From Ruditapes philippinarum (taxonomy: Eukaryota): DNA of 64,000 nt. The position numbers were made by a program, and so were the translations under genes. The notes under the pieces are model-generated. The model was not told the origin of the DNA, did no database searches, and saw nothing but the letters and a program-made list of their open reading frames with translations. Positions 1 to 57,894 of the stretch are shown piece after piece (the stretch's first letter is position 1; each line of letters begins with the position of its first letter). The stretch covers positions 310,001 to 374,000 of the forward strand of contig NW_026867154.1 of NCBI RefSeq assembly GCF_026571515.1. The letters run 5' to 3'.

Positions 1-1953
<1,953 letters not shown>

Positions 1954-5795: not shown

Positions 5796-8676
<2,881 letters not shown>

Positions 8677-13761: not shown

Positions 13762-15245
13762 ATGGTAAGTTTAATTTCTTCAGATAATCAATGCAAGTTA
13801 TAAAGATGATAGATGTTTTGTTTAAGAAACTCATTCGGGCATTTGTAATATTTCATACTTCTATATGCATTAAATTTGTAAATATAAATAGCAGTTTTCT
13901 TAAACTGATGAACAATTTAATTGGCTATTTTTTTCTTAGCTTTATGTCAGAGTAATAAGATACAGCGTAACAAAACGCTCTAATGAAATGTCTTATTCCT
14001 AACTGTTTCAGGCTAATCAATTAACAGAGGAGCAAACTGCAGGTATGTACCATTTTGATTGCGTCCTGGAAGTTCTAAAATGAGTATAACGTTATAAATA
14101 TTTACTCTTAAAGCTTTCAGTGTAAAATTATTTTTGATTGTAATAGAATTCAAGGAGGCTTTTGGTCTGTTTGACAAGGATGGTGATGGCACAATCACAA
14201 CCAACGAATTAGGAACAGTAATGAAGTCTTTGGGACAGAACCCTACTGAAGCAGAGTTACGAGATATGATCAATGAGGTGGATGTTGACGGTAGACTTTT
14301 ACTTCTTTTGATGATAAATATTATAGTTGTTGTAAATCTATATAATAGTTTGAATATTTTGTTCTCATTAATCCATTCACAATTTTTGTTTTCTTATGAT
14401 TGATTGATGGGCGCACTAGTTTTCTAATGGTTTATGCAAAAAAATATGATGAACAAGATAAACAAGGAAAGGCGGCGTTCAATAAACGCAACCCCCACAC
14501 GACCCATTAACAAATTTTATCAAACACATACATTATATACATTCAACCAGACAGTCCCCTGGTGTAGTATAAAAAGAAATTGACTTACATTAGAGATATG
14601 CTTCAATGAATTTTCATAAATACATAATAGTCTAACAATTAACTGGTTGCCGTTCCACTGTACATGTATTTGTGTGGGTGGGAATGCGTTATGTTAATGT
14701 TGATTCTCACTATCATTATGATGTTTTTATAGGAAATGGTACTATAGATTTCCAAGAATTTCTTACTATGATGGCACATAGCCAGACTGATGATGCTGAC
14801 GGAGATTTACGTGAAGCTTTCAGCGTTTTTGATAAAGATAACAGCGGAACAATTAGTGCAGCTGAATTAAGACATGTTATGACAAACCTTGGTGAAAAAC
14901 TTACAGATGAAGAAGTTGATGAAATGATAAGGGAGGCTGATATTGATGGCGATGGTCAAGTCAATTTTGAAGGTAAAAAGAACAAATGCATAACGATTCA
15001 ACAAAGTTGTTGCGAAAATAAAAATCTGGTTTAATGAAGGTTCGATTAATATGGACTATTCTTAGAATTTTGTCGAAATAAATTTCCAATTTATACATTT
15101 ATACCAAATCTGGTATATGTTAGTTTGATACCTAGTTTCAGTTTTGATTCAGGGATGAGTTTTAGTTTGAACATTTCTAAAAGAACAGCGCAAAAATCTG
15201 CTTTGTTTTATTTCAGAGTTTGCCATGATGATGAAAGGGAAATAA
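13762..15245 (+). CDS. Calmodulin-like paralogue CaM3, 148 aa. Exons 13762-13764, 14012-14042, 14147-14290, 14733-14972, 15217-15245
   Basis: GT-AG introns. Protein: [148 protein letters not shown]. Confidence 0.95.
14444..14506 (+). repeat. Short interspersed repeat (also 16140-16231 on minus and 55537-55620 on plus)
   Basis: ATATGATRAACAAGATMAACAARGAAAGGCGGCGTTCAATRAAC is present three times. Confidence 0.75.
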
Positions 15246-16535: not shown

Positions 16536-16820
16536 AGATATTTTTAACAGCTGTGTTGCAGCTGTAGAATATTAGTACGTGCTTCAGCTTAATTTTCCTG
16601 GTTTGTCTTTTAATACTTTTTTGTGCTGAATACTGCCAAGGCCGCCTAATGGGTGTGATGATAAGACACGGGAAAATTGAGTCTGCAATGAGTTCAGCTA
16701 TTTTTTCTTTTTGTTTATATTAATCACCTTTCCAGAATTTAAATAATGAATAATTAATAGTGTTAAGAAGAAAAACAAAACTACTTTTAAGCGTTAACGG
16801 AGACACAAACAATCGGTCCT

Positions 16821-19800
16821 TCAACTTGATGACATAACTTCGATCAAATCTGAAATCAATGCAATTTATACATTTGATTGTATGAAATATATAACCGTCT
16901 AAACCTTTAGTATTGAGTTTATGAATTACAATGTATGCACTAGCAATTGATATGGTTATGGTTAAATTCAATTGTAGATTGATCCTATCTATAAAATTGT
17001 GTACAATTTGTATTTTAATCACCATATACTGTATGCACCTACCGGCCACATCTTTATAAAATAAACCTGTTATAATTCATTATATCAAACCTTACCTTTA
17101 TAGTCGACGTGCCCATCGACAATATTAATATCAGCATCTTGTAAGATATCATTTGCTTCCTTTGTAGTAAGTCCACCACCCAAATTTGTCATGGCATTTC
17201 TGAGGTTAGCAGCACTTAATATACCATACCCCTCCTTATCGAATACTCTGAAAGCTTCATATATATCCTCATCCCCTTCTTCTTCATTCAGTTTTCTTTT
17301 CATTAAAGTGAGGAATTTTGCCTCACTCACTTTTCCCTTACCTTGTGATTAGAAGCAAAAAAATCATTTAAAGTACTAGAAAAAACAGTACATTTAGTCA
17401 TTTTTGAGTAAAACATACATGAACATGTACATTTTACTACCAAAAGAAATAATATATTTAAAATTAATGTAGAAAAAAATCTAAAAGAGTTTGTACACAA
17501 GTGTATAATTATCTGGACTATATATTTCACTATCATTAACTTAACATATTCTAATGCTAAATAAACTGTTATGTTTGCTCAAACGTAAAATAGAAATAAA
17601 TAGGGTTTACATTATTTTTGCGTAGGGTTTACATTAATTTACTTTAAAAGACATTCCCACCGACAGTCCTTTATAACCTACAGTTTACTTGGATATATTC
17701 AATTGGCGACAAATTGAAATTTCATTTTGCATAAGTAGCTTTTGAAAGACGTGTTCACCGAATTATTGAAAGGGTTGATACGAAAAACAATCCTCTAGGT
17801 GTAGCAATAACGGTTTTGGAATGATGACTTGCAATGAGAGACAACCCTGTTCGGAGTCTTCTTATTGGAGAGGTCATTAGTTGTCTCCACAGTGTTGAGA
17901 ATGATTGCTGGCGGCATCCATTTTTTGCGTATCAAATTGAAGCTAATGCATCTCATTTTAAGCCTTAAAACATTAAAACTAGTCTACTTAAATTGATTTG
18001 CACATGCTCTTCATATTTAATGCCCTTTTTGGGAGAGGAAATGTTTCTTTATACTTTCCAAAACATTAATCGAAAATCTGATCATTGGATTTTACAATCA
18101 TTTATTTTAAAGTTAGTTTGATAACATAACATAAATTGTTCTCTTTCTAGAAAAATATCCCTAATGCGCCAAGAAAATGTTCGTTTCTCCGCCAGATAAT
18201 CTTTTAAAAGTGCAAAACAAACTTTCATTATAATACTTTATTTAATTTTACCCATGAAATATGATGCTTTATTTAATTTTAACCATGAAATATGGTGCTA
18301 TATCAGTCAAATATATTTCATATTTTTTAAAAATAAATATGAAATATAAATATGAAAGTGGGCGGAGTCAAAACTTATTTTAAGGGACTTCTTTCGGCGT
18401 TTTGTTTGAAAAATCTGATAAATACAAAACAACTTTTTCTTGAATTTTGTTTTGAAAACTATCTAGCATGATAGAAAATGGTCTAACTAAGAAAATTAAT
18501 CCGAACACAAATATCTTTTATTCAGTAATTAACGCTGTACAGACGTTTAAAGAGTTGTTTACATGACGTCACAATGTAGCGCCAAACAGCGCGTGCTTAC
18601 GCATAAATTACTGCGCGCTGTACAATCGCAGTCGGTAGCAAGCAAGGGGATTCGTTACCATTTTCTTTGATAATGAAATTAAATAAAAAGGATATTTTTT
18701 TGTTTTTTCGTGAAATATGGTATATATTTTCACTCAACATGATAAAATGCCACATATTTTCACTCGCTGTACCGGCTCGTGAAAATATGTGGCATTTTAT
18801 CATGTTTCGTGAAAATATATTCCATATTTCACGCAAACGAAAAATATCCTCTTAATATCAGTCAAATATATTTCATATTTTTTTAAAAGTAAATATGTAA
18901 TATAAATATGAAAGTGGGCGGAGTCAAAACTCATATTTATTTTCGGGGACTTCTTTCGCCATTTTGTTTGAAAAATCTGATAATTACAAAAAACTTTTTG
19001 TTGAATTTTGTTTTGAAAACTATCTAGAATGATAGAAAATGGTCTAACTAAGAAAATAAATCCGAACACCAATATCTTTAATTCAGTCATTAACGCTGTA
19101 CAGACATTTAAAGAGTTGTTTACGTGACGTCACAATGAAGCGCTAAATATCGCGTGCAAAACAATAATTATATTACTGCGCGTTGTACAATTGCAGTTGC
19201 GTAGCAAGCAAGGGGGTTCGTAACCATATTTCTTTGATAATGAAATTAAATAAAAAGGTTGTTTTTTCGTTTTTCGTGAAATATCGTATATATTTTCACG
19301 AAACATGATAAAATGCCACATATTTTCACTCGCCGTCCCGGCTCGTGAAAATATGTGGCATTTTATCATGTTTCGTGAAAATATATTCCATATTTCACTT
19401 AAACGAAAAAATATCCTCTTAATATTCAATATGAATAATACATTCTATTTTGTTAAAAATTTGTAATTTATAATCAATTATTGTGCCTTTTATGCAAAAA
19501 TATCTCCAAATATTTTCGAATTAAACAAATCTTACACAGCTGCAGAAATACCTCTTGGTTGCTTGTATATCCCAGTTTGCTGAATATTTAAACATGCATT
19601 CTTTTTATGGCAATTAAATGCACTTGCGACAAAATCGATGGCTGAATCATTAATGATTCAACCCGTTGATGTTTTAAAAGTTGAACGTTTTTGAATTAAT
19701 CAAAATTGTTTTTTTTTACTTATGACTTTGAATAAAGTATCGAAGCACTTTATTACAACATCAATCTAGACTATGCAAAGGCACGTCGTGCAAAAGATGA

Positions 19801-21070
19801 CAGTTTTGGCGTTACGTACAATTCAAGCAAAAAGTGACCGGGTGTACCCAATGTTTGATAAACAAACATGTGTAAATCAAATGGTTTGGATATTAAACAG
19901 TTATGACCAATATAATCAACGTTATGCTGAAACGTAAGATGGATGTTTCTTCTTCGTATGAGTATAAGTATGAAAGAAAGAAGTTAAAACCAACTTTTGC
20001 GTTTAAAATAAGATTGATAACTTAAGTTTATCAAACAATGCAGTTTACCATCATCTAACTCTGCAATATCCCCATCAGTTGGTGTCCGTCCAAGACATCT
20101 TATTGCAGTTTCTAGATCATCTCTGTTAATTGTACCAGCATTTTCCACATCAAACACGGAGAATATTTCCTTGATGTCTACGAAAACGAAGATATAAGAA
20201 GTTATTAATCGTATAATTCCAATTTACAAATTTACCGAATACACTCAAAAAACATTCATGTAATAAAAAGAATAGAAACAGTTTGTTGAAGCAACTCCAA
20301 ACATAGATATTAAACAAAAATATTAGTTAGCGTCATTTTATGGCACTAGCAAAAAGGTAGGGGCTAGCGTTACCTGATGCTTTCATTATAAATTGGAACG
20401 ATTCACTTAATTAATATGATGTTGAAGACATTGCTAACCAAATAAGAAGTGCAATTAAATGTATTCATGCAAAGAAATGGATTTACTACATCCGTTTAAT
20501 AAACGAAATTAGTCAATTACTGCGATTTTAATTTTTTTTAAACATGTATATAATGAATAACATATTTATTTTAAAGATTTAGAGTGTAGAGACATGTAAT
20601 TCACCCGAAGAAATACTTTAAACAATCAAGCTGCAACATAGATGTTAGGTATTGAACAACATCATAGACACATTGTAAATATTACAGAAACTTTATACAG
20701 AAATATTGAAATTAAACAAACGTTATAAATAAATTATATAAACTTAACATAGACAAAACAGAAACTAAGACAAGATGAATATAACAAACTGGCTGTATAC
20801 GGTAGATTAAATATATTACATAAACATAAAAATAGATTACATACTTGCTTCGTGTGTACTGTCGACTTGATTTGCCTTAAAGATATAAATGAGCAGTAAA
20901 TAAATTTGCGTTACAATATGTTAAATTGATAATGCTCATCAAATACCGCTTACAATTTTTTAAATTATGTAATCGATACTTAAACGTACATGTTTATCAT
21001 ATTATTGTCAAATTATCAATCATTAAAACTTCGCGAAAAAAGAATAAACGAAATTTTAATGACCTACCAT
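16821..21070 (-). CDS. Highly divergent calmodulin-like protein (CaM-L4), 145 aa. Exons 21068-21070, 20845-20875, 20049-20177, 17096-17341, 16821-16849
   Basis: Same exon phases as CaM (3/31/129/246/29 nt), all GT-AG, open frame. Protein: [145 protein letters not shown]. Confidence 0.85.
18300..19425 (-). mobile_element. Tandem dimer (~555-570 bp unit) of a long-hairpin element in CaM-L4 intron 3
   Basis: The unit starts ATATCAGTCAAATATATTTCATA at 18300 and again at 18855. Each unit ends in a ~160 bp palindrome centred on CTCG..CTCG (18763-18779, 19329-19345). Confidence 0.85.
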
Positions 21071-22326: not shown

Positions 22327-25033
<2,707 letters not shown>

Positions 25034-27388: not shown

Positions 27389-31763
<4,375 letters not shown>

Positions 31764-34551: not shown

Positions 34552-37021
34552 TTATTTCGTCATCATCATTTTTACAAATTCTGAAAAAGAAATGCATAAA
34601 TTTTGCAAAAATTGATCTAAACTTTATACATATACTGTAAGTGATGCATTACATTTTATTTGCTTTTGTCGTAAAAGAAGTTACATTTACTTATAATGTA
34701 TCAAATTGTATTTAGTTGTTTTAACTGTAACTCTGTGTTAGTTTATTTTTTATAAACAAATTTAAAATTTATACTAAAATGTCTAACGTCGGATGTCAAT
34801 ATTTACGATTTGGGAAATCAGATACAAATGCAAATTGAGCAAACAAGTTCTTGAAAGAATACGAATATGAAGTAAAATAATTATTTTTTATAAACTTTGA
34901 TATCATGATATATATAATTTCCAAAAATAAAGTGATGACCTGTAATGTTTTTTTGTACAAAAAGTTATACACCGCCTTTTTAGTTTTTTTACATAATGAT
35001 AGAATCATACCATCATAATTAACATGACCATCACCATCACCATCTGCTTCTCTAATCATTTCATCAACTTCTTCATCTGTAAGTTTTTCTCCTAGTTTAG
35101 TCATCACATTTCGTAGTTCAGATGCACTTATAAATCCGTTGCCATCTTTATCGAAGACACGGAAAGCGTCGCGAATTTCTTCTTCACTATCTGTATCCCT
35201 CAGTTTACGAGCCATCATATTGAGAAATTCAGCAAAGTCTATCGTTCCATTTCCTAAAATAATTAACTTATATTTTCATTGCAGTTATACTGTAGGTGTT
35301 TTTCAGTTTTGGGTTGAATTGATACGTTTTCTACGTTGTTAAGTACAGTATAATTGACACATGTACAGTTACTATACATAATTTTATGGTCACAAATTTA
35401 GAATTTTATTTTATCAACGACGAATACTGATAATGTGACGAAATAGTCATACAACATTACCATCAGCATCCACTTCATTGACCATTTCTTTTAAATCAGC
35501 TTCTGTGGGATTCTGTCCCAAGGACCTCATTACTGTTCCTAACTCTTTTGTTGTGATTGTGCCATCACCATCCTTGTCAAAAAGACTGAACGCCTCTTTG
35601 AATTCTGTAACAAAGTCAAAACATTACTTTGATACAATTTTACTTCAGTACACATTGAATTTGACAGAACTTTTTGTTAATCTTATATTCTAACACGACT
35701 CGCATTTTTCCCCATTGAACATAGAAGAACCGAAAGTGTGTGTTATTTTAGAAATAATATATCCCAAACAGTGATTTTATCGCTCAATAACATCACTGTT
35801 TGGAGTTCGGATGCGAGGAATTATATCACGAGGGCGTAGCCAATGTGATATAATGATGCGCATCTGAACGACAAACAGTGATGTTATTAAGCGATAAAAT
35901 CACTGATTTGGATATATTATTTCGATTCTAACACGACATTAACAAATAAATGTTGCGGTACTTGATAGTTAAGCAAAATTGCGCCTGATTTGTTTCCGAA
36001 CTTATTTTCAGCGTGTCGGATTTTTAGTAGTTACGTCACGTGTATAATGATTACGTCACATGTCTAAATATAGAACGTCAAACAGTGATTTTATAGCATA
36101 ATAACACACACTTTGGTTCTTCTATGTTCAATAGGGAAAAATGCGCTTGTGTTAGAATTAATTAGACCCCTATAATGTTTTCCCATCTAATTGAAAGATC
36201 GAATTAGTTTGTCATGAAGGAGAAATTGTCATTTCAGACATAGCTCAAGCTTGTAAAGTACAAAGTTCGTCCATTTCAAGTAATAGTTTTATAAAGTTAT
36301 ATAGGTTTGCAATTTCTTTCGTCATATTACTCTTGTAAATAAAAAAGCATAAAGTTATACAAGTAACACTAGTCTATCAATAGTTTGCAAATATAATATA
36401 TAGAATGCGTGTTTTACTTCTAGAATCATGCGCACTATAAAATCAACTGTTTTGATTAAACAAATAATTAATGAAGTGGTCAATGGAAATGCTAACATGG
36501 AAATCGTTGACAAAACAAGAATATTTACCAGCAATTTGATCCCCGGACAACTGATCTACCTGTAAAAAAGGTACGAATGTATTCTATATCAAAATAATTG
36601 TTTTTCAATATATATTCTCGTATATGGATATATTTAATGAAAAAATAATGAATATTTTTATACATAATTTAGAATAAATCAATAAAGATGGATGATCATT
36701 TCAAATGCATCCACATTTATATTAACTTATTAATTTTGACGAGAATTTAATCTAAACATGCTTCAAATGAAAGGACACATACTATTTTATGTAAGTGGGG
36801 GAAATATTCGCGCATGAAATATTAAGATGAATTGTAGATGCTGTTCAGCAAGCAAAATTAAGTGGTATTTGACAGTAAATATGTAGACAATAGATTCCAT
36901 TACCTTATAACTATTTTGTAAAATGGTTTGTATTAGGACATATATATCTATTTAATATATTTATAAATATTATACTAATATCCTTTTTTTCATCGTGCAC
37001 TTTGATGACCTGACTTACCAT
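34552..37021 (-). CDS. Calmodulin-like paralogue CaM7, 149 aa. Exons 37019-37021, 36529-36559, 35461-35604, 35011-35253, 34552-34580
   Basis: GT-AG introns. Protein: [149 protein letters not shown]. Confidence 0.95.
35687..36158. mobile_element. Element with ~60-bp outer inverted repeats and an inner ~170-bp hairpin (CaM7 intron 2)
   Basis: Outer IR ATTCTAACACGACTCGCATTTTTCCC...GTGTGTGTTATT with its reverse complement at 36100-36158. Inner palindrome 35752-35923, apex CGAGGGCGTAGCC. Confidence 0.8.

Positions 37022-49413: not shown

Positions 49414-51454
<2,041 letters not shown>

Positions 51455-56257: not shown

Positions 56258-57894
<1,637 letters not shown>

What the first reader, a model, noticed from the sequence alone, without database searches (positions are those of the whole stretch)
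16821..21070. Intact calmodulin descendant with all four EF-hand loops degenerate (candidate Ca2+-blind CaM or light chain)
Seen: a 145-aa ORF over five correctly phased GT-AG exons, mostly missed by the ORF track. EF1 is [14 protein letters not shown]2 has a 5-residue deletion and Lys at the bidentate position ([11 protein letters not shown]). EF3 is [12 protein letters not shown] with E12 changed to N. EF4 has a 1-residue insertion ([13 protein letters not shown]). The trimethylated Lys115 motif LGEKLT has become LGGGLT. Hydrophobic core residues (IFSVFD, FLTLM, AFRVFD) are retained and both indels are in frame despite heavy divergence, which argues for selection. Established: position-12 Glu is needed for high-affinity Ca2+ binding, and myosin light chains and CALML4 are EF-hand proteins that bind IQ motifs without Ca2+. 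Inference: a Ca2+-independent IQ-motif binder or CaM antagonist that arose inside the cluster.
Basis: partly seen in the sequence, partly recalled or inferred. Interest (0 to 1): 0.82.

Follow-up and report, generated by a model that had tools for sequence, protein, structure and literature searches.

The report
Degenerate-loop calmodulin paralogue of Manila clam
Inside a tandem array of ordinary calmodulin genes in the Manila clam sits an intact, evolutionarily maintained copy in which none of the four calcium-binding loops is canonical; it is probably a calcium-insensitive calmodulin-like subunit, a kind of protein already known from vertebrate CALML4 and myosin light chains.

Summary
A 145-aa ORF lies on the minus strand in five GT-AG exons (21070-16821). 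The model is identical to RefSeq XP_060577957.1, "calmodulin-like [Ruditapes philippinarum]", so the gene is already annotated but unstudied.

It sits among about nine calmodulin genes and shares their exon plan: ATG-only exon 1, 31-nt exon 2, phase-1 introns, 29-nt last exon.

- **Relatives:** the genome has no close paralogue (best 54% on exon 4). The 1.84-billion-protein search found no full-length relative above 47% identity.
- **Second lineage:** one fragment from another sample (P0003, 74-75% identical) shares 22 derived residues with it. These include LGGGLT, DKxGYG and the EF4 insertion. The two form a 100/100 clade with a long stem (1.05) and short tips (0.12, 0.25).
- **Selection:** neutral simulation leaves the frame open in 0.5% of trials, and branch dN/dS is about 0.24 (noisy).

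Selection is therefore supported. The tree does not resolve an origin inside the cluster.

The scan had noted this same stretch once before, and other calmodulin-like clusters elsewhere in this genome.

Verdict: a new member of a known kind, of moderate interest.

The parts
21068..21070 (-). Coding part of exon 1: the ATG only, followed by donor GTAGGT
   Evidence: the same ATG-only first coding exon is known for calmodulin genes (own knowledge)
20845..20875 (-). Exon 2, 31 nt, encoding [10 protein letters not shown] plus 1 nt; AG/GT flanks
   Evidence: Neighbouring calmodulin genes have a 31-nt exon 2 in the same phase, at 25033-25003, 30623-30593 and 14012-14042.
20049..20177 (-). Exon 3, 129 nt (144 nt in the neighbours): helix A, the EF1 loop (20116-20151), helix B, a shortened helix C and the first residues of the EF2 loop. 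It ends in phase 1 inside the Gly codon, as in the neighbours.
   Evidence: Pfam EF-hand_6 E=2.7e-6
17342..20048 (-). Intron 3, 2.7 kb. It is enlarged by two tandem copies (about 18323-18844 and 18879-19410) of a roughly 560-nt interspersed repeat with internal hairpins.
   Evidence: 2901 first-look candidates in the genome, 112 matches among the 40 that were scored, 78-96% identity, best about 40 places 88-96%
17096..17341 (-). Exon 4, 246 nt (243 nt in the neighbours): the rest of the EF2 loop (17316-17341), the linker, the EF3 loop (17205-17240), LGGGLT (17166-17183) and the 13-residue EF4 loop (17096-17132, completed by 16848-16849).
   Evidence: Pfam EF-hand_7 E=1.5e-7; 74% identical fragment P0003
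16821..16849 (-). Exon 5, 29 nt: completes Asp137, then LIEVMSSS and TGA. It has the same length and phase as the last coding exon of the neighbours.
   Evidence: neighbours: 22355-22327, 34580-34552, 5824-5796, 51426-51454
16609..16614 (-). ATTAAA, the only poly(A)-signal hexamer within 600 nt downstream of the stop. Its use is not shown.

Best explanation
This is a real, selectively maintained paralogue of calmodulin in the Manila clam (Ruditapes philippinarum). It was born by duplication of a calmodulin gene of the type that fills this tandem array. It went through a burst of amino-acid change (about 0.38 nonsynonymous substitutions per site), then settled under purifying selection in its new form. 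It keeps the four helix-loop-helix units and the hydrophobic target-binding residues. It has lost canonical Ca2+ coordination in all four loops, lost the E114-K115 pair (now Gly-Gly) and shortened helix C. Most likely it no longer switches with Ca2+ in the physiological range. It would then act as a constitutive, Ca2+-insensitive subunit that clamps an amphipathic or IQ-type helix of a dedicated partner, much as CALML4 and myosin essential light chains do. Shown here: the gene structure, its intactness, its divergence, the conservation of the derived state in a second lineage, and a predicted CaM-like fold. Inferred only: Ca2+ insensitivity, the type of target, and expression.
For: The five-exon ORF is intact with GT-AG introns and is identical to XP_060577957.1. 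Exon lengths and phases match the neighbouring calmodulin genes. None of the four loops fits the EF-loop pattern, against four of four in the untruncated neighbours. Position 12 is D, K, N and D in the four loops. Neutral simulation from a neighbouring CaM coding sequence to the observed 38% nucleotide difference gives a stop-free frame in 0.5% of 20,000 trials, with a mean of 5 stops. All 8 splice dinucleotides, the ATG and the stop position are kept, and both indels are in frame. Three-point branch estimates give bN 0.38, median bS 1.34 and omega about 0.24, against bN 0.02-0.09 and omega 0.04-0.20 for the neighbours. P0003 forms a 100/100 clade with it, with stem 1.05 and tips 0.12 and 0.25. 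In exon 4 there are 22 shared-derived residues against 3 and 6 lineage-specific ones, and their 17 differences are conservative (mean BLOSUM62 0.71 against a neutral -0.26, P=0.008). AlphaFold2 gives mean pLDDT 79, eight helices and four short loop strands. The best Foldseek matches are calmodulin, led by apo-CaM/IQ complexes. CALML4 is a precedent: 44% identical to CaM, no chelating residues, no Ca2+ binding, and a myosin-7 light chain (PMC10579538).
Against: The RefSeq model may rest on homology alone. Synonymous sites are saturated, so omega is noisy: single three-point estimates range from 0.15 to 1.0, and one is undefined because bS came out at about 0. The source species of P0003 is unknown and no DNA is available for it, so no dN/dS could be computed after the split. 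P0003 could be a presence/absence paralogue of the same species. P0003 covers exon 4 only, so nothing shows conservation of the N-lobe, whose EF2 is the most damaged. EF4 keeps D/N/D/D/D at the ligand positions and EF1 keeps D/E/N/D, so residual Ca2+ or Mg2+ binding is possible. No partner is known.
Confidence: 0.5

Rival explanations
1. It is still a metal sensor. The 13-residue EF4 loop, perhaps with EF1, binds Ca2+ or Mg2+ in a non-canonical geometry, so the protein is a low-affinity or Mg2+-preferring calmodulin-like sensor rather than a Ca2+-blind one.
For: EF4 has oxygen-bearing side chains at every ligand position if the extra residue bulges out (D125, N127, D130, D134, D137). Its core DGHVDYK is identical in P0003, where the loop is EIDTSDGHVDYK. 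EF1 keeps D1, E3, N9 and D12. From my own knowledge: a one-residue insertion is tolerated in the Ca2+-binding EF-hand 1 of BM-40/SPARC (Hohenester 1996, listed as ref 52 in PMC4196763), and Asp at position 12 occurs in Mg2+/Ca2+ sites of myosin regulatory light chains. In CALML4 too the fourth hand looked partly conserved and had to be tested.
Against: No loop fits the EF-loop pattern. EF4's partner EF3 has Tyr at position 5 and Asn at 12, and paired sites normally bind cooperatively. CALML4, with a similar residual fourth hand, did not bind Ca2+.
Confidence: 0.25
2. It is a recently silenced or never-transcribed gene copy, an unprocessed pseudogene still open by chance since its inactivation, that an automatic annotator called from homology.
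For: It has by far the highest nonsynonymous divergence in the cluster (bN 0.38 against 0.02-0.09). EF2 and helix C are truncated. A repeat insertion has enlarged intron 3. No transcript evidence could be obtained here. Only two lineages are known in 5.8 billion and 1.84 billion-protein searches.
Against: The ORF, ATG, stop position and all 8 splice dinucleotides are intact. Neutral drift over the whole divergence keeps a frame open in only 0.5% of trials. The derived residues are conserved in P0003, with short tips and conservative differences. This excludes old pseudogenisation but not a very recent one.
Confidence: 0.12
3. It is a decoy. It competes with apo-calmodulin for shared targets and so damps or buffers calmodulin signalling, rather than serving one dedicated partner.
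For: It lies in and derives from the calmodulin array. It retains the hydrophobic pattern of the CaM helices. The predicted fold is nearest to apo-CaM/IQ complexes.
Against: Six of the nine CaM methionines are replaced or deleted, E114-K115 have become Gly-Gly, and helix C is shortened. These changes point to an altered rather than a shared target surface. No data bear on it directly.
Confidence: 0.08
4. It is an orthologue of an already described family (CALML4, myosin essential light chain, troponin C) and has been misread as a calmodulin descendant.
For: The language-model feature search ranks clusters named 'calmodulin-like protein 4' among several equally scored hits, at 0.93.
Against: All 60 listed PDB matches are calmodulin itself, at E about 1e-32. 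The best single-domain hits in the 1.84-billion-protein search align over calmodulin's own positions 1-148 at 42-47% identity; that library carries no names, so I infer they are calmodulins. The exon plan and chromosomal position are those of the local calmodulin genes. In the tree it branches from the canonical calmodulin polytomy, not with the distant CaM-like genes of the genome. No CALML4 sequence was available by tool, so this was not tested directly.
Confidence: 0.03

Closest known systems
Canonical calmodulin (the neighbouring genes in this window; solved structures such as 1CLL, 1EXR, 1CFC)
   Same: It has the same length class (145 against 149 aa) and four helix-loop-helix units. It has the same exon plan and intron phases as the neighbours. 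It is 42-47% identical over the full length, E about 1e-32. The hydrophobic helix positions are retained.
   Different: It has no canonical loop and no Glu at position 12 in any hand. It has a 5-residue deletion (helix C/EF2) and a 1-residue insertion (EF4). E114-K115 have become Gly-Gly, and only 3 of the 9 methionines are kept. Its nonsynonymous divergence is 4 to 20 times that of the neighbours.
CALML4 (vertebrate calmodulin-like protein 4, light chain of myosin-7a/7b)
   Same: CALML4 is about 44% identical to CaM and lacks the chelating residues in every EF-hand, with a partly conserved fourth hand. It was shown not to bind Ca2+ and to act as a Ca2+-insensitive IQ-bound light chain (PMC10579538). 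This is the closest functional model for the clam protein.
   Different: Orthology is not shown. The clam gene sits in and shares its structure with a bivalve calmodulin array, and it has only one known relative. If it is functionally alike, it is probably an independent, convergent origin. No myosin or IQ partner is known, and Ca2+ binding is untested.
Myosin essential and regulatory light chains
   Same: They are CaM-fold proteins with mostly degenerate loops that bind IQ helices constitutively. Asp at position 12 occurs in the Mg2+/Ca2+ site of the regulatory light chain (own knowledge).
   Different: By sequence it is nearest to calmodulin, not to light chains: all 60 listed PDB matches are CaM. 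It lacks the N-terminal extension of the regulatory light chains.
Lineage-specific calmodulin duplicates such as Drosophila Androcam and the bivalve calmodulin-like proteins (own knowledge)
   Same: They arose by duplication of calmodulin, diverged quickly and became specialised.
   Different: Those described keep at least some working Ca2+ sites. Here none is canonical.

Membership tests
Calmodulin sensu stricto | Four canonical 12-residue EF loops, each with bidentate Glu at position 12 | tested here: not met
   Position 12 is D, K, N and D. EF4 has 13 residues.
Calmodulin sensu stricto | Near-invariant sequence (animal calmodulins are more than 90% identical; own knowledge) | tested here: not met
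   Full-length relatives are 42-47% identical: solved calmodulins and the best single-domain hits of the big search. The best match in its own genome is 54% on exon 4.
Calmodulin sensu stricto | Calmodulin gene structure: ATG-only first coding exon, 31-nt exon 2, phase-1 introns in the EF2 Gly codon and in the codon after EF4's Tyr, and a 29-nt last coding exon | tested here: met
   The structure is identical to the neighbouring calmodulin genes, which also have exons 4 and 5 of the vertebrate plan fused.
Calmodulin sensu stricto | The LGEKLT motif with Lys115, the trimethylation site | tested here: not met
   It reads LGGGLT at 17166-17183, and P0003 has the same.
EF-hand superfamily, calmodulin-like group | Two EF-hand pairs recognised by profile, and a four helix-loop-helix fold | tested here: met
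   On exon 4, Pfam EF-hand_7, _6 and _8 score at or above their cut-offs; on exon 3, EF-hand_6 does. The AlphaFold2 model has eight helices and four loop strands, pLDDT 79. Foldseek matches calmodulin with probability 1.00.
CALML4-type Ca2+-insensitive light chain | Chelating residues missing in every EF-hand | tested here: met
   Shown by sequence only. For CALML4 itself see PMC10579538.
CALML4-type Ca2+-insensitive light chain | No Ca2+ binding in gel-shift or thermophoresis assays | not testable with these tools
   This needs recombinant protein.
CALML4-type Ca2+-insensitive light chain | Orthology to CALML4, or binding to a myosin-7 IQ motif | not tested
   No CALML4 sequence was obtainable by tool. 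The only lead is the feature search, at 0.93 and tied with other CaM-like clusters. Position and exon plan argue for a local origin.
Myosin essential/regulatory light chain | Sequence nearest to the light chains | tested here: not met
   All 60 listed PDB matches are calmodulin.
Unprocessed pseudogene | Stops, frameshifts, or lost splice sites or start codon | tested here: not met
   None is present.
Unprocessed pseudogene | Neutral evolution | tested here: not met
   The frame stays stop-free in 0.5% of neutral trials. Branch omega is about 0.24 but noisy. The derived state is conserved in P0003, and the replacements are conservative, P=0.008.
Unprocessed pseudogene | No transcripts | not testable with these tools

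The most novel reading that the evidence does not exclude
Venerid clams independently evolved a Ca2+-blind calmodulin derivative out of their tandem calmodulin array, convergent with vertebrate CALML4. A burst of change killed all four sites, shortened helix C and replaced E114-K115 with a flexible Gly-Gly. This burst created a new, now conserved, target specificity as a dedicated light chain or as an apo-calmodulin competitor.
Probability: 0.35. Interest if true: 0.5.

Novelty: new member of a known kind. Interest (0 to 1): 0.35.

Why it matters
The gene offers a clean natural experiment. The parent genes lie next to the derivative, and they share its exon plan. The derived state is fixed in at least two lineages. 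One can therefore ask what it takes to turn the most conserved Ca2+ sensor of eukaryotes into a Ca2+-independent binding module, and whether the route repeats the one taken by CALML4 and the myosin light chains.

For bivalve biology, it adds a probable non-sensor to the large and poorly characterised calmodulin-like repertoire. Members of that repertoire are often read as 'Ca2+ signalling' or 'biomineralisation' genes in transcriptome studies. The practical lesson for annotation is that 'calmodulin-like' here should not be taken to mean Ca2+-binding.

Tried and rejected
- **Contig look-up:** I therefore have no DNA, species or flanks for the only relative, and no dN/dS after the split.
- **Metagenome scan:** The search for related loci with P0002 returned only an unrelated 32% match, L031.
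- **Word searches:** a search with P0001 and one with the P0002+P0003 alignment found no further members.
- **Big search:** the 1.84-billion-protein search found nothing closer than 47% identity apart from the fragment P0002.
- **Literature:** searches found nothing on this gene or its accession.
- **Pairwise dN/dS:** values of 0.16-0.40 against the neighbours are not decisive on their own. Synonymous sites are saturated, and the partner branch is under strong constraint.
- **Codon-position divergence:** 0.32, 0.23 and 0.59 at positions 1, 2 and 3. The third-position excess comes partly from the partner branch, so I do not rely on it.
- **Link to the '[11 protein letters not shown]' gene:** a possible tie to the CaM-like gene at C15641:1468-1716 (L014) was not borne out by the tree.
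- **Complex prediction:** not used, because no specific partner can be named.
- **The joined step:** no typed joined protein was sent to any search tool. The exons were searched by reference. Whole-protein searches used the database's own record P0001, which equals the joined model. The exons were joined only inside scripts, from window.fa.
Full report
**What is there**

The window is AT-rich (about 30% G+C). It is G000:C15641:310001-374000 of a 1.41-Gb assembly.

On the minus strand between 21070 and 16821 lies a five-exon open reading frame:
- an ATG-only exon (21070-21068)
- 31 nt (20875-20845)
- 129 nt (20177-20049)
- 246 nt (17341-17096)
- 29 nt including TGA (16849-16821)

All four introns begin with GT and end with AG. 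The exons sum to 438 nt, or 145 codons plus the stop.
- EF1: [12 protein letters not shown]
- EF2: [12 protein letters not shown]
- EF3: [12 protein letters not shown]
- EF4: [12 protein letters not shown]+D, 13 residues
- LGGGLT in place of LGEKLT

**Identity of the organism and of the gene**

I searched the exons by reference. Exon 4 as the open frame window:17088-17348 found a 145-aa database protein, P0001. It is named 'calmodulin-like [Ruditapes philippinarum]', XP_060577957.1, and is identical to the joined model. So the window is Manila clam and the gene model is already in RefSeq, although no paper mentions it.

Whole-protein searches used P0001.

**Context**

tBLASTn of the model against the window shows about nine calmodulin genes:
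- about 2-160 (-)
- 6499-7576 (-)
- 14012-14971 (+)
- this gene
- 22327-25033 (-)
- 28096-30623 (-)
- 34552-35602 (-)
- 50276-51454 (+)
- 57146-57703 (+)

They share one exon plan with our gene. Exon 2 is 31 nt. Exon 3 ends in phase 1 inside the Gly codon of the EF2 loop. One long exon runs from there to a phase-1 break after the Tyr of EF4. The last coding exon is 29 nt.

Our exon 3 is 15 nt shorter and our exon 4 is 3 nt longer than in the neighbours. These are the two in-frame indels. The gene is therefore a structural duplicate of the local calmodulin type.

Its intron 3 is 2.7 kb because it holds two copies of a roughly 560-nt repeat. That repeat is scattered through the genome.

**How far it has moved**

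Pfam recognises EF-hand pairs on both large exons. phmmer against the PDB returns only calmodulin among the 60 listed matches, at E about 1e-32. The alignment runs 1-144 against 1-148, with the two indels as its only gaps.

Identity to calmodulins is 42-47%. No close paralogue exists in the clam genome; the best is 54% on exon 4, and it is a neighbour.

The untruncated neighbours fit it four times each.

Three of calmodulin's nine methionines are kept, and the others are replaced by I, L or V or are deleted. So hydrophobicity is kept while the Met-rich surface is not.

**Is it alive?**

Four lines of evidence bear on this.

1. *Intactness.* The ATG, the stop position, eight splice dinucleotides and two in-frame indels are all in order. 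I mutated a neighbouring calmodulin coding sequence neutrally, with AT-biased substitutions and kappa 2, to the observed 38% nucleotide difference. This left a stop-free frame in 0.5% of 20,000 trials, with a mean of 5 stops.

2. *Rates.* Pairwise dN is 0.40-0.47 and dS is 1.2-2.6 against the neighbours. Three-point estimates isolate our branch. They give bN 0.38 (stable), median bS 1.34 and omega about 0.24. Most single estimates lie at 0.15-0.5, one reaches 1.0, and one is undefined because bS came out at about 0. The neighbours give bN 0.02-0.09 and omega 0.04-0.20. Synonymous sites are saturated, so this is only indicative.

3. *A second lineage.* P0003 is a 73-aa exon-4 fragment from a Logan/ENA assembly and is 74-75% identical.
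   - It has LGGGLT, DKDGYG, KEANDIL and the EF4 insertion with the identical core DGHVDYK. It also has the same donor position after DYK.
   - Of 68 comparable positions, 29 are unchanged and 22 are derived and shared. Three are derived only in ours, 6 only in P0003, and 8 differ in all three.
   - In an IQ-TREE analysis of exon 4 from 25 sequences, the two form a 100/100 clade on a stem of 1.05 changes per site, with tips of 0.12 and 0.25.
   - Their 17 differences are more conservative than random single-nucleotide replacements (mean BLOSUM62 0.71 against -0.26, P=0.008).
   - This is the pattern of a burst of change followed by constraint.

4. *Fold.* AlphaFold2 with a 47-row alignment gives mean pLDDT 79, eight helices and the four short loop strands, with helix C reduced to residues 46-52. 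Foldseek finds calmodulin, and apo-CaM/IQ complexes (myosin-1c, PPEF2, Nav1.6) rank first. I treat that ranking only as a lead.

**What is missing**

- *The relative.* Its species, DNA and flanks are unknown. It could even be a presence/absence paralogue within the species. It covers only exon 4, so nothing yet shows constraint on the N-lobe.
- *Further members.* Two word searches and the search of 1.84 billion representatives found none. As far as public proteins show, the family is restricted to this clam and one near lineage.

**Mechanism**

The most likely reading (0.5) is a Ca2+-insensitive calmodulin-like subunit that holds a helix of a dedicated partner constitutively. Three things support it:
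- The fold and hydrophobic pattern are retained.
- No site is canonical.
- Surface features such as Gly-Gly for E114-K115 are changed yet conserved.

The precedent is CALML4. It is 44% identical to calmodulin and lacks chelating residues in each hand. It does not bind Ca2+ in gel-shift or thermophoresis assays, and it serves as a Ca2+-independent light chain of myosin-7a/7b (PMC10579538).

The main rival (0.25) is residual metal binding.
- EF4 has acidic or amide side chains at every ligand position and is the best-conserved loop between the two lineages.
- One-residue insertions and Asp at position 12 are tolerated in some working EF-hands (own knowledge; the BM-40 structure is cited in PMC4196763).

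A very recent pseudogene (0.12) cannot be excluded without transcripts. A decoy role (0.08) and orthology to a described family (0.03) are less likely.

**Origin inside the cluster**

Position and exon plan fit a local origin. However, the tree places the pair in an unresolved polytomy with the canonical calmodulins of the genome. Synonymous distances to all neighbours are saturated. The duplication is therefore old, at least as old as the split from the P0003 lineage. Its donor cannot be named.

**Verdict**

This is a real, already annotated but unstudied gene. It is a new member of the known kind 'Ca2+-insensitive calmodulin-like proteins', probably of independent origin. Evidence for selection is good. 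Evidence on expression, metal binding and partner is absent.

The scan had noted this same stretch once (s1-792546), a neighbouring calmodulin copy (s1-792611), and other calmodulin-like clusters elsewhere in this genome (s1-803804, s1-811340).

Noticed in passing
window 18323-18844 and 18879-19410 (intron 3 of the gene): There are two tandem copies, about 560 nt apart and 80-93% alike, of an interspersed repeat with internal hairpins (arms of 66-73 nt, 88-89% complementary). The element is scattered through the genome: 2901 first-look candidates, 112 matches among the 40 that were scored, at 78-96% identity (the best about 40 places 88-96%). Copies often occur in tandem pairs. It looks like a MITE- or satellite-like element.
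   Followed up: partly
window 22327-25033 (-) and 28096-30623 (-): These two calmodulin genes encode identical exon 3 and exon 4 peptides. They differ only at silent sites (pN 0, pS 0.19), and their 31-nt second exons are identical. This indicates strong purifying selection or gene conversion. It relates to the scan's note s1-792611.
   Followed up: partly
window 14012-14971 (+) and 57146-57703 (+): These two further cluster members are moderately divergent calmodulin-likes. One has [10 protein letters not shown], an [12 protein letters not shown] linker and EF3 [12 protein letters not shown]. The other has [23 protein letters not shown]. Both have all four loops canonical. Their bN is 0.09 and omega 0.14-0.20, midway between the canonical copies and the gene studied here.
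   Followed up: partly
L014 (G000:C15641:1468-1716) and L015 (G000:C14194:3840-4088): An identical calmodulin-like exon 4 ([26 protein letters not shown]...) occurs on two contigs. This may be a haplotig or an assembly duplicate. It shares TLMKRK.NE with the studied gene but does not group with it in the tree.
   Followed up: partly
P0002 (JGI metagenome protein, 81 aa): This is an exon-4 ORF 99% identical to the clam gene, with one replacement (FLTLM to FLTFM), on a 2.9-kb metagenome contig. It is presumably clam DNA in an environmental sample and an allelic variant. The contig itself was not returned by the metagenome scan.
   Followed up: partly
P0005 (532 aa), P0006 (1219 aa), P0010, P0015 and others: These database proteins carry 4-11 calmodulin-like units in tandem. 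They are probably gene models that fuse neighbouring genes of tandem calmodulin arrays like this one.
   Followed up: no
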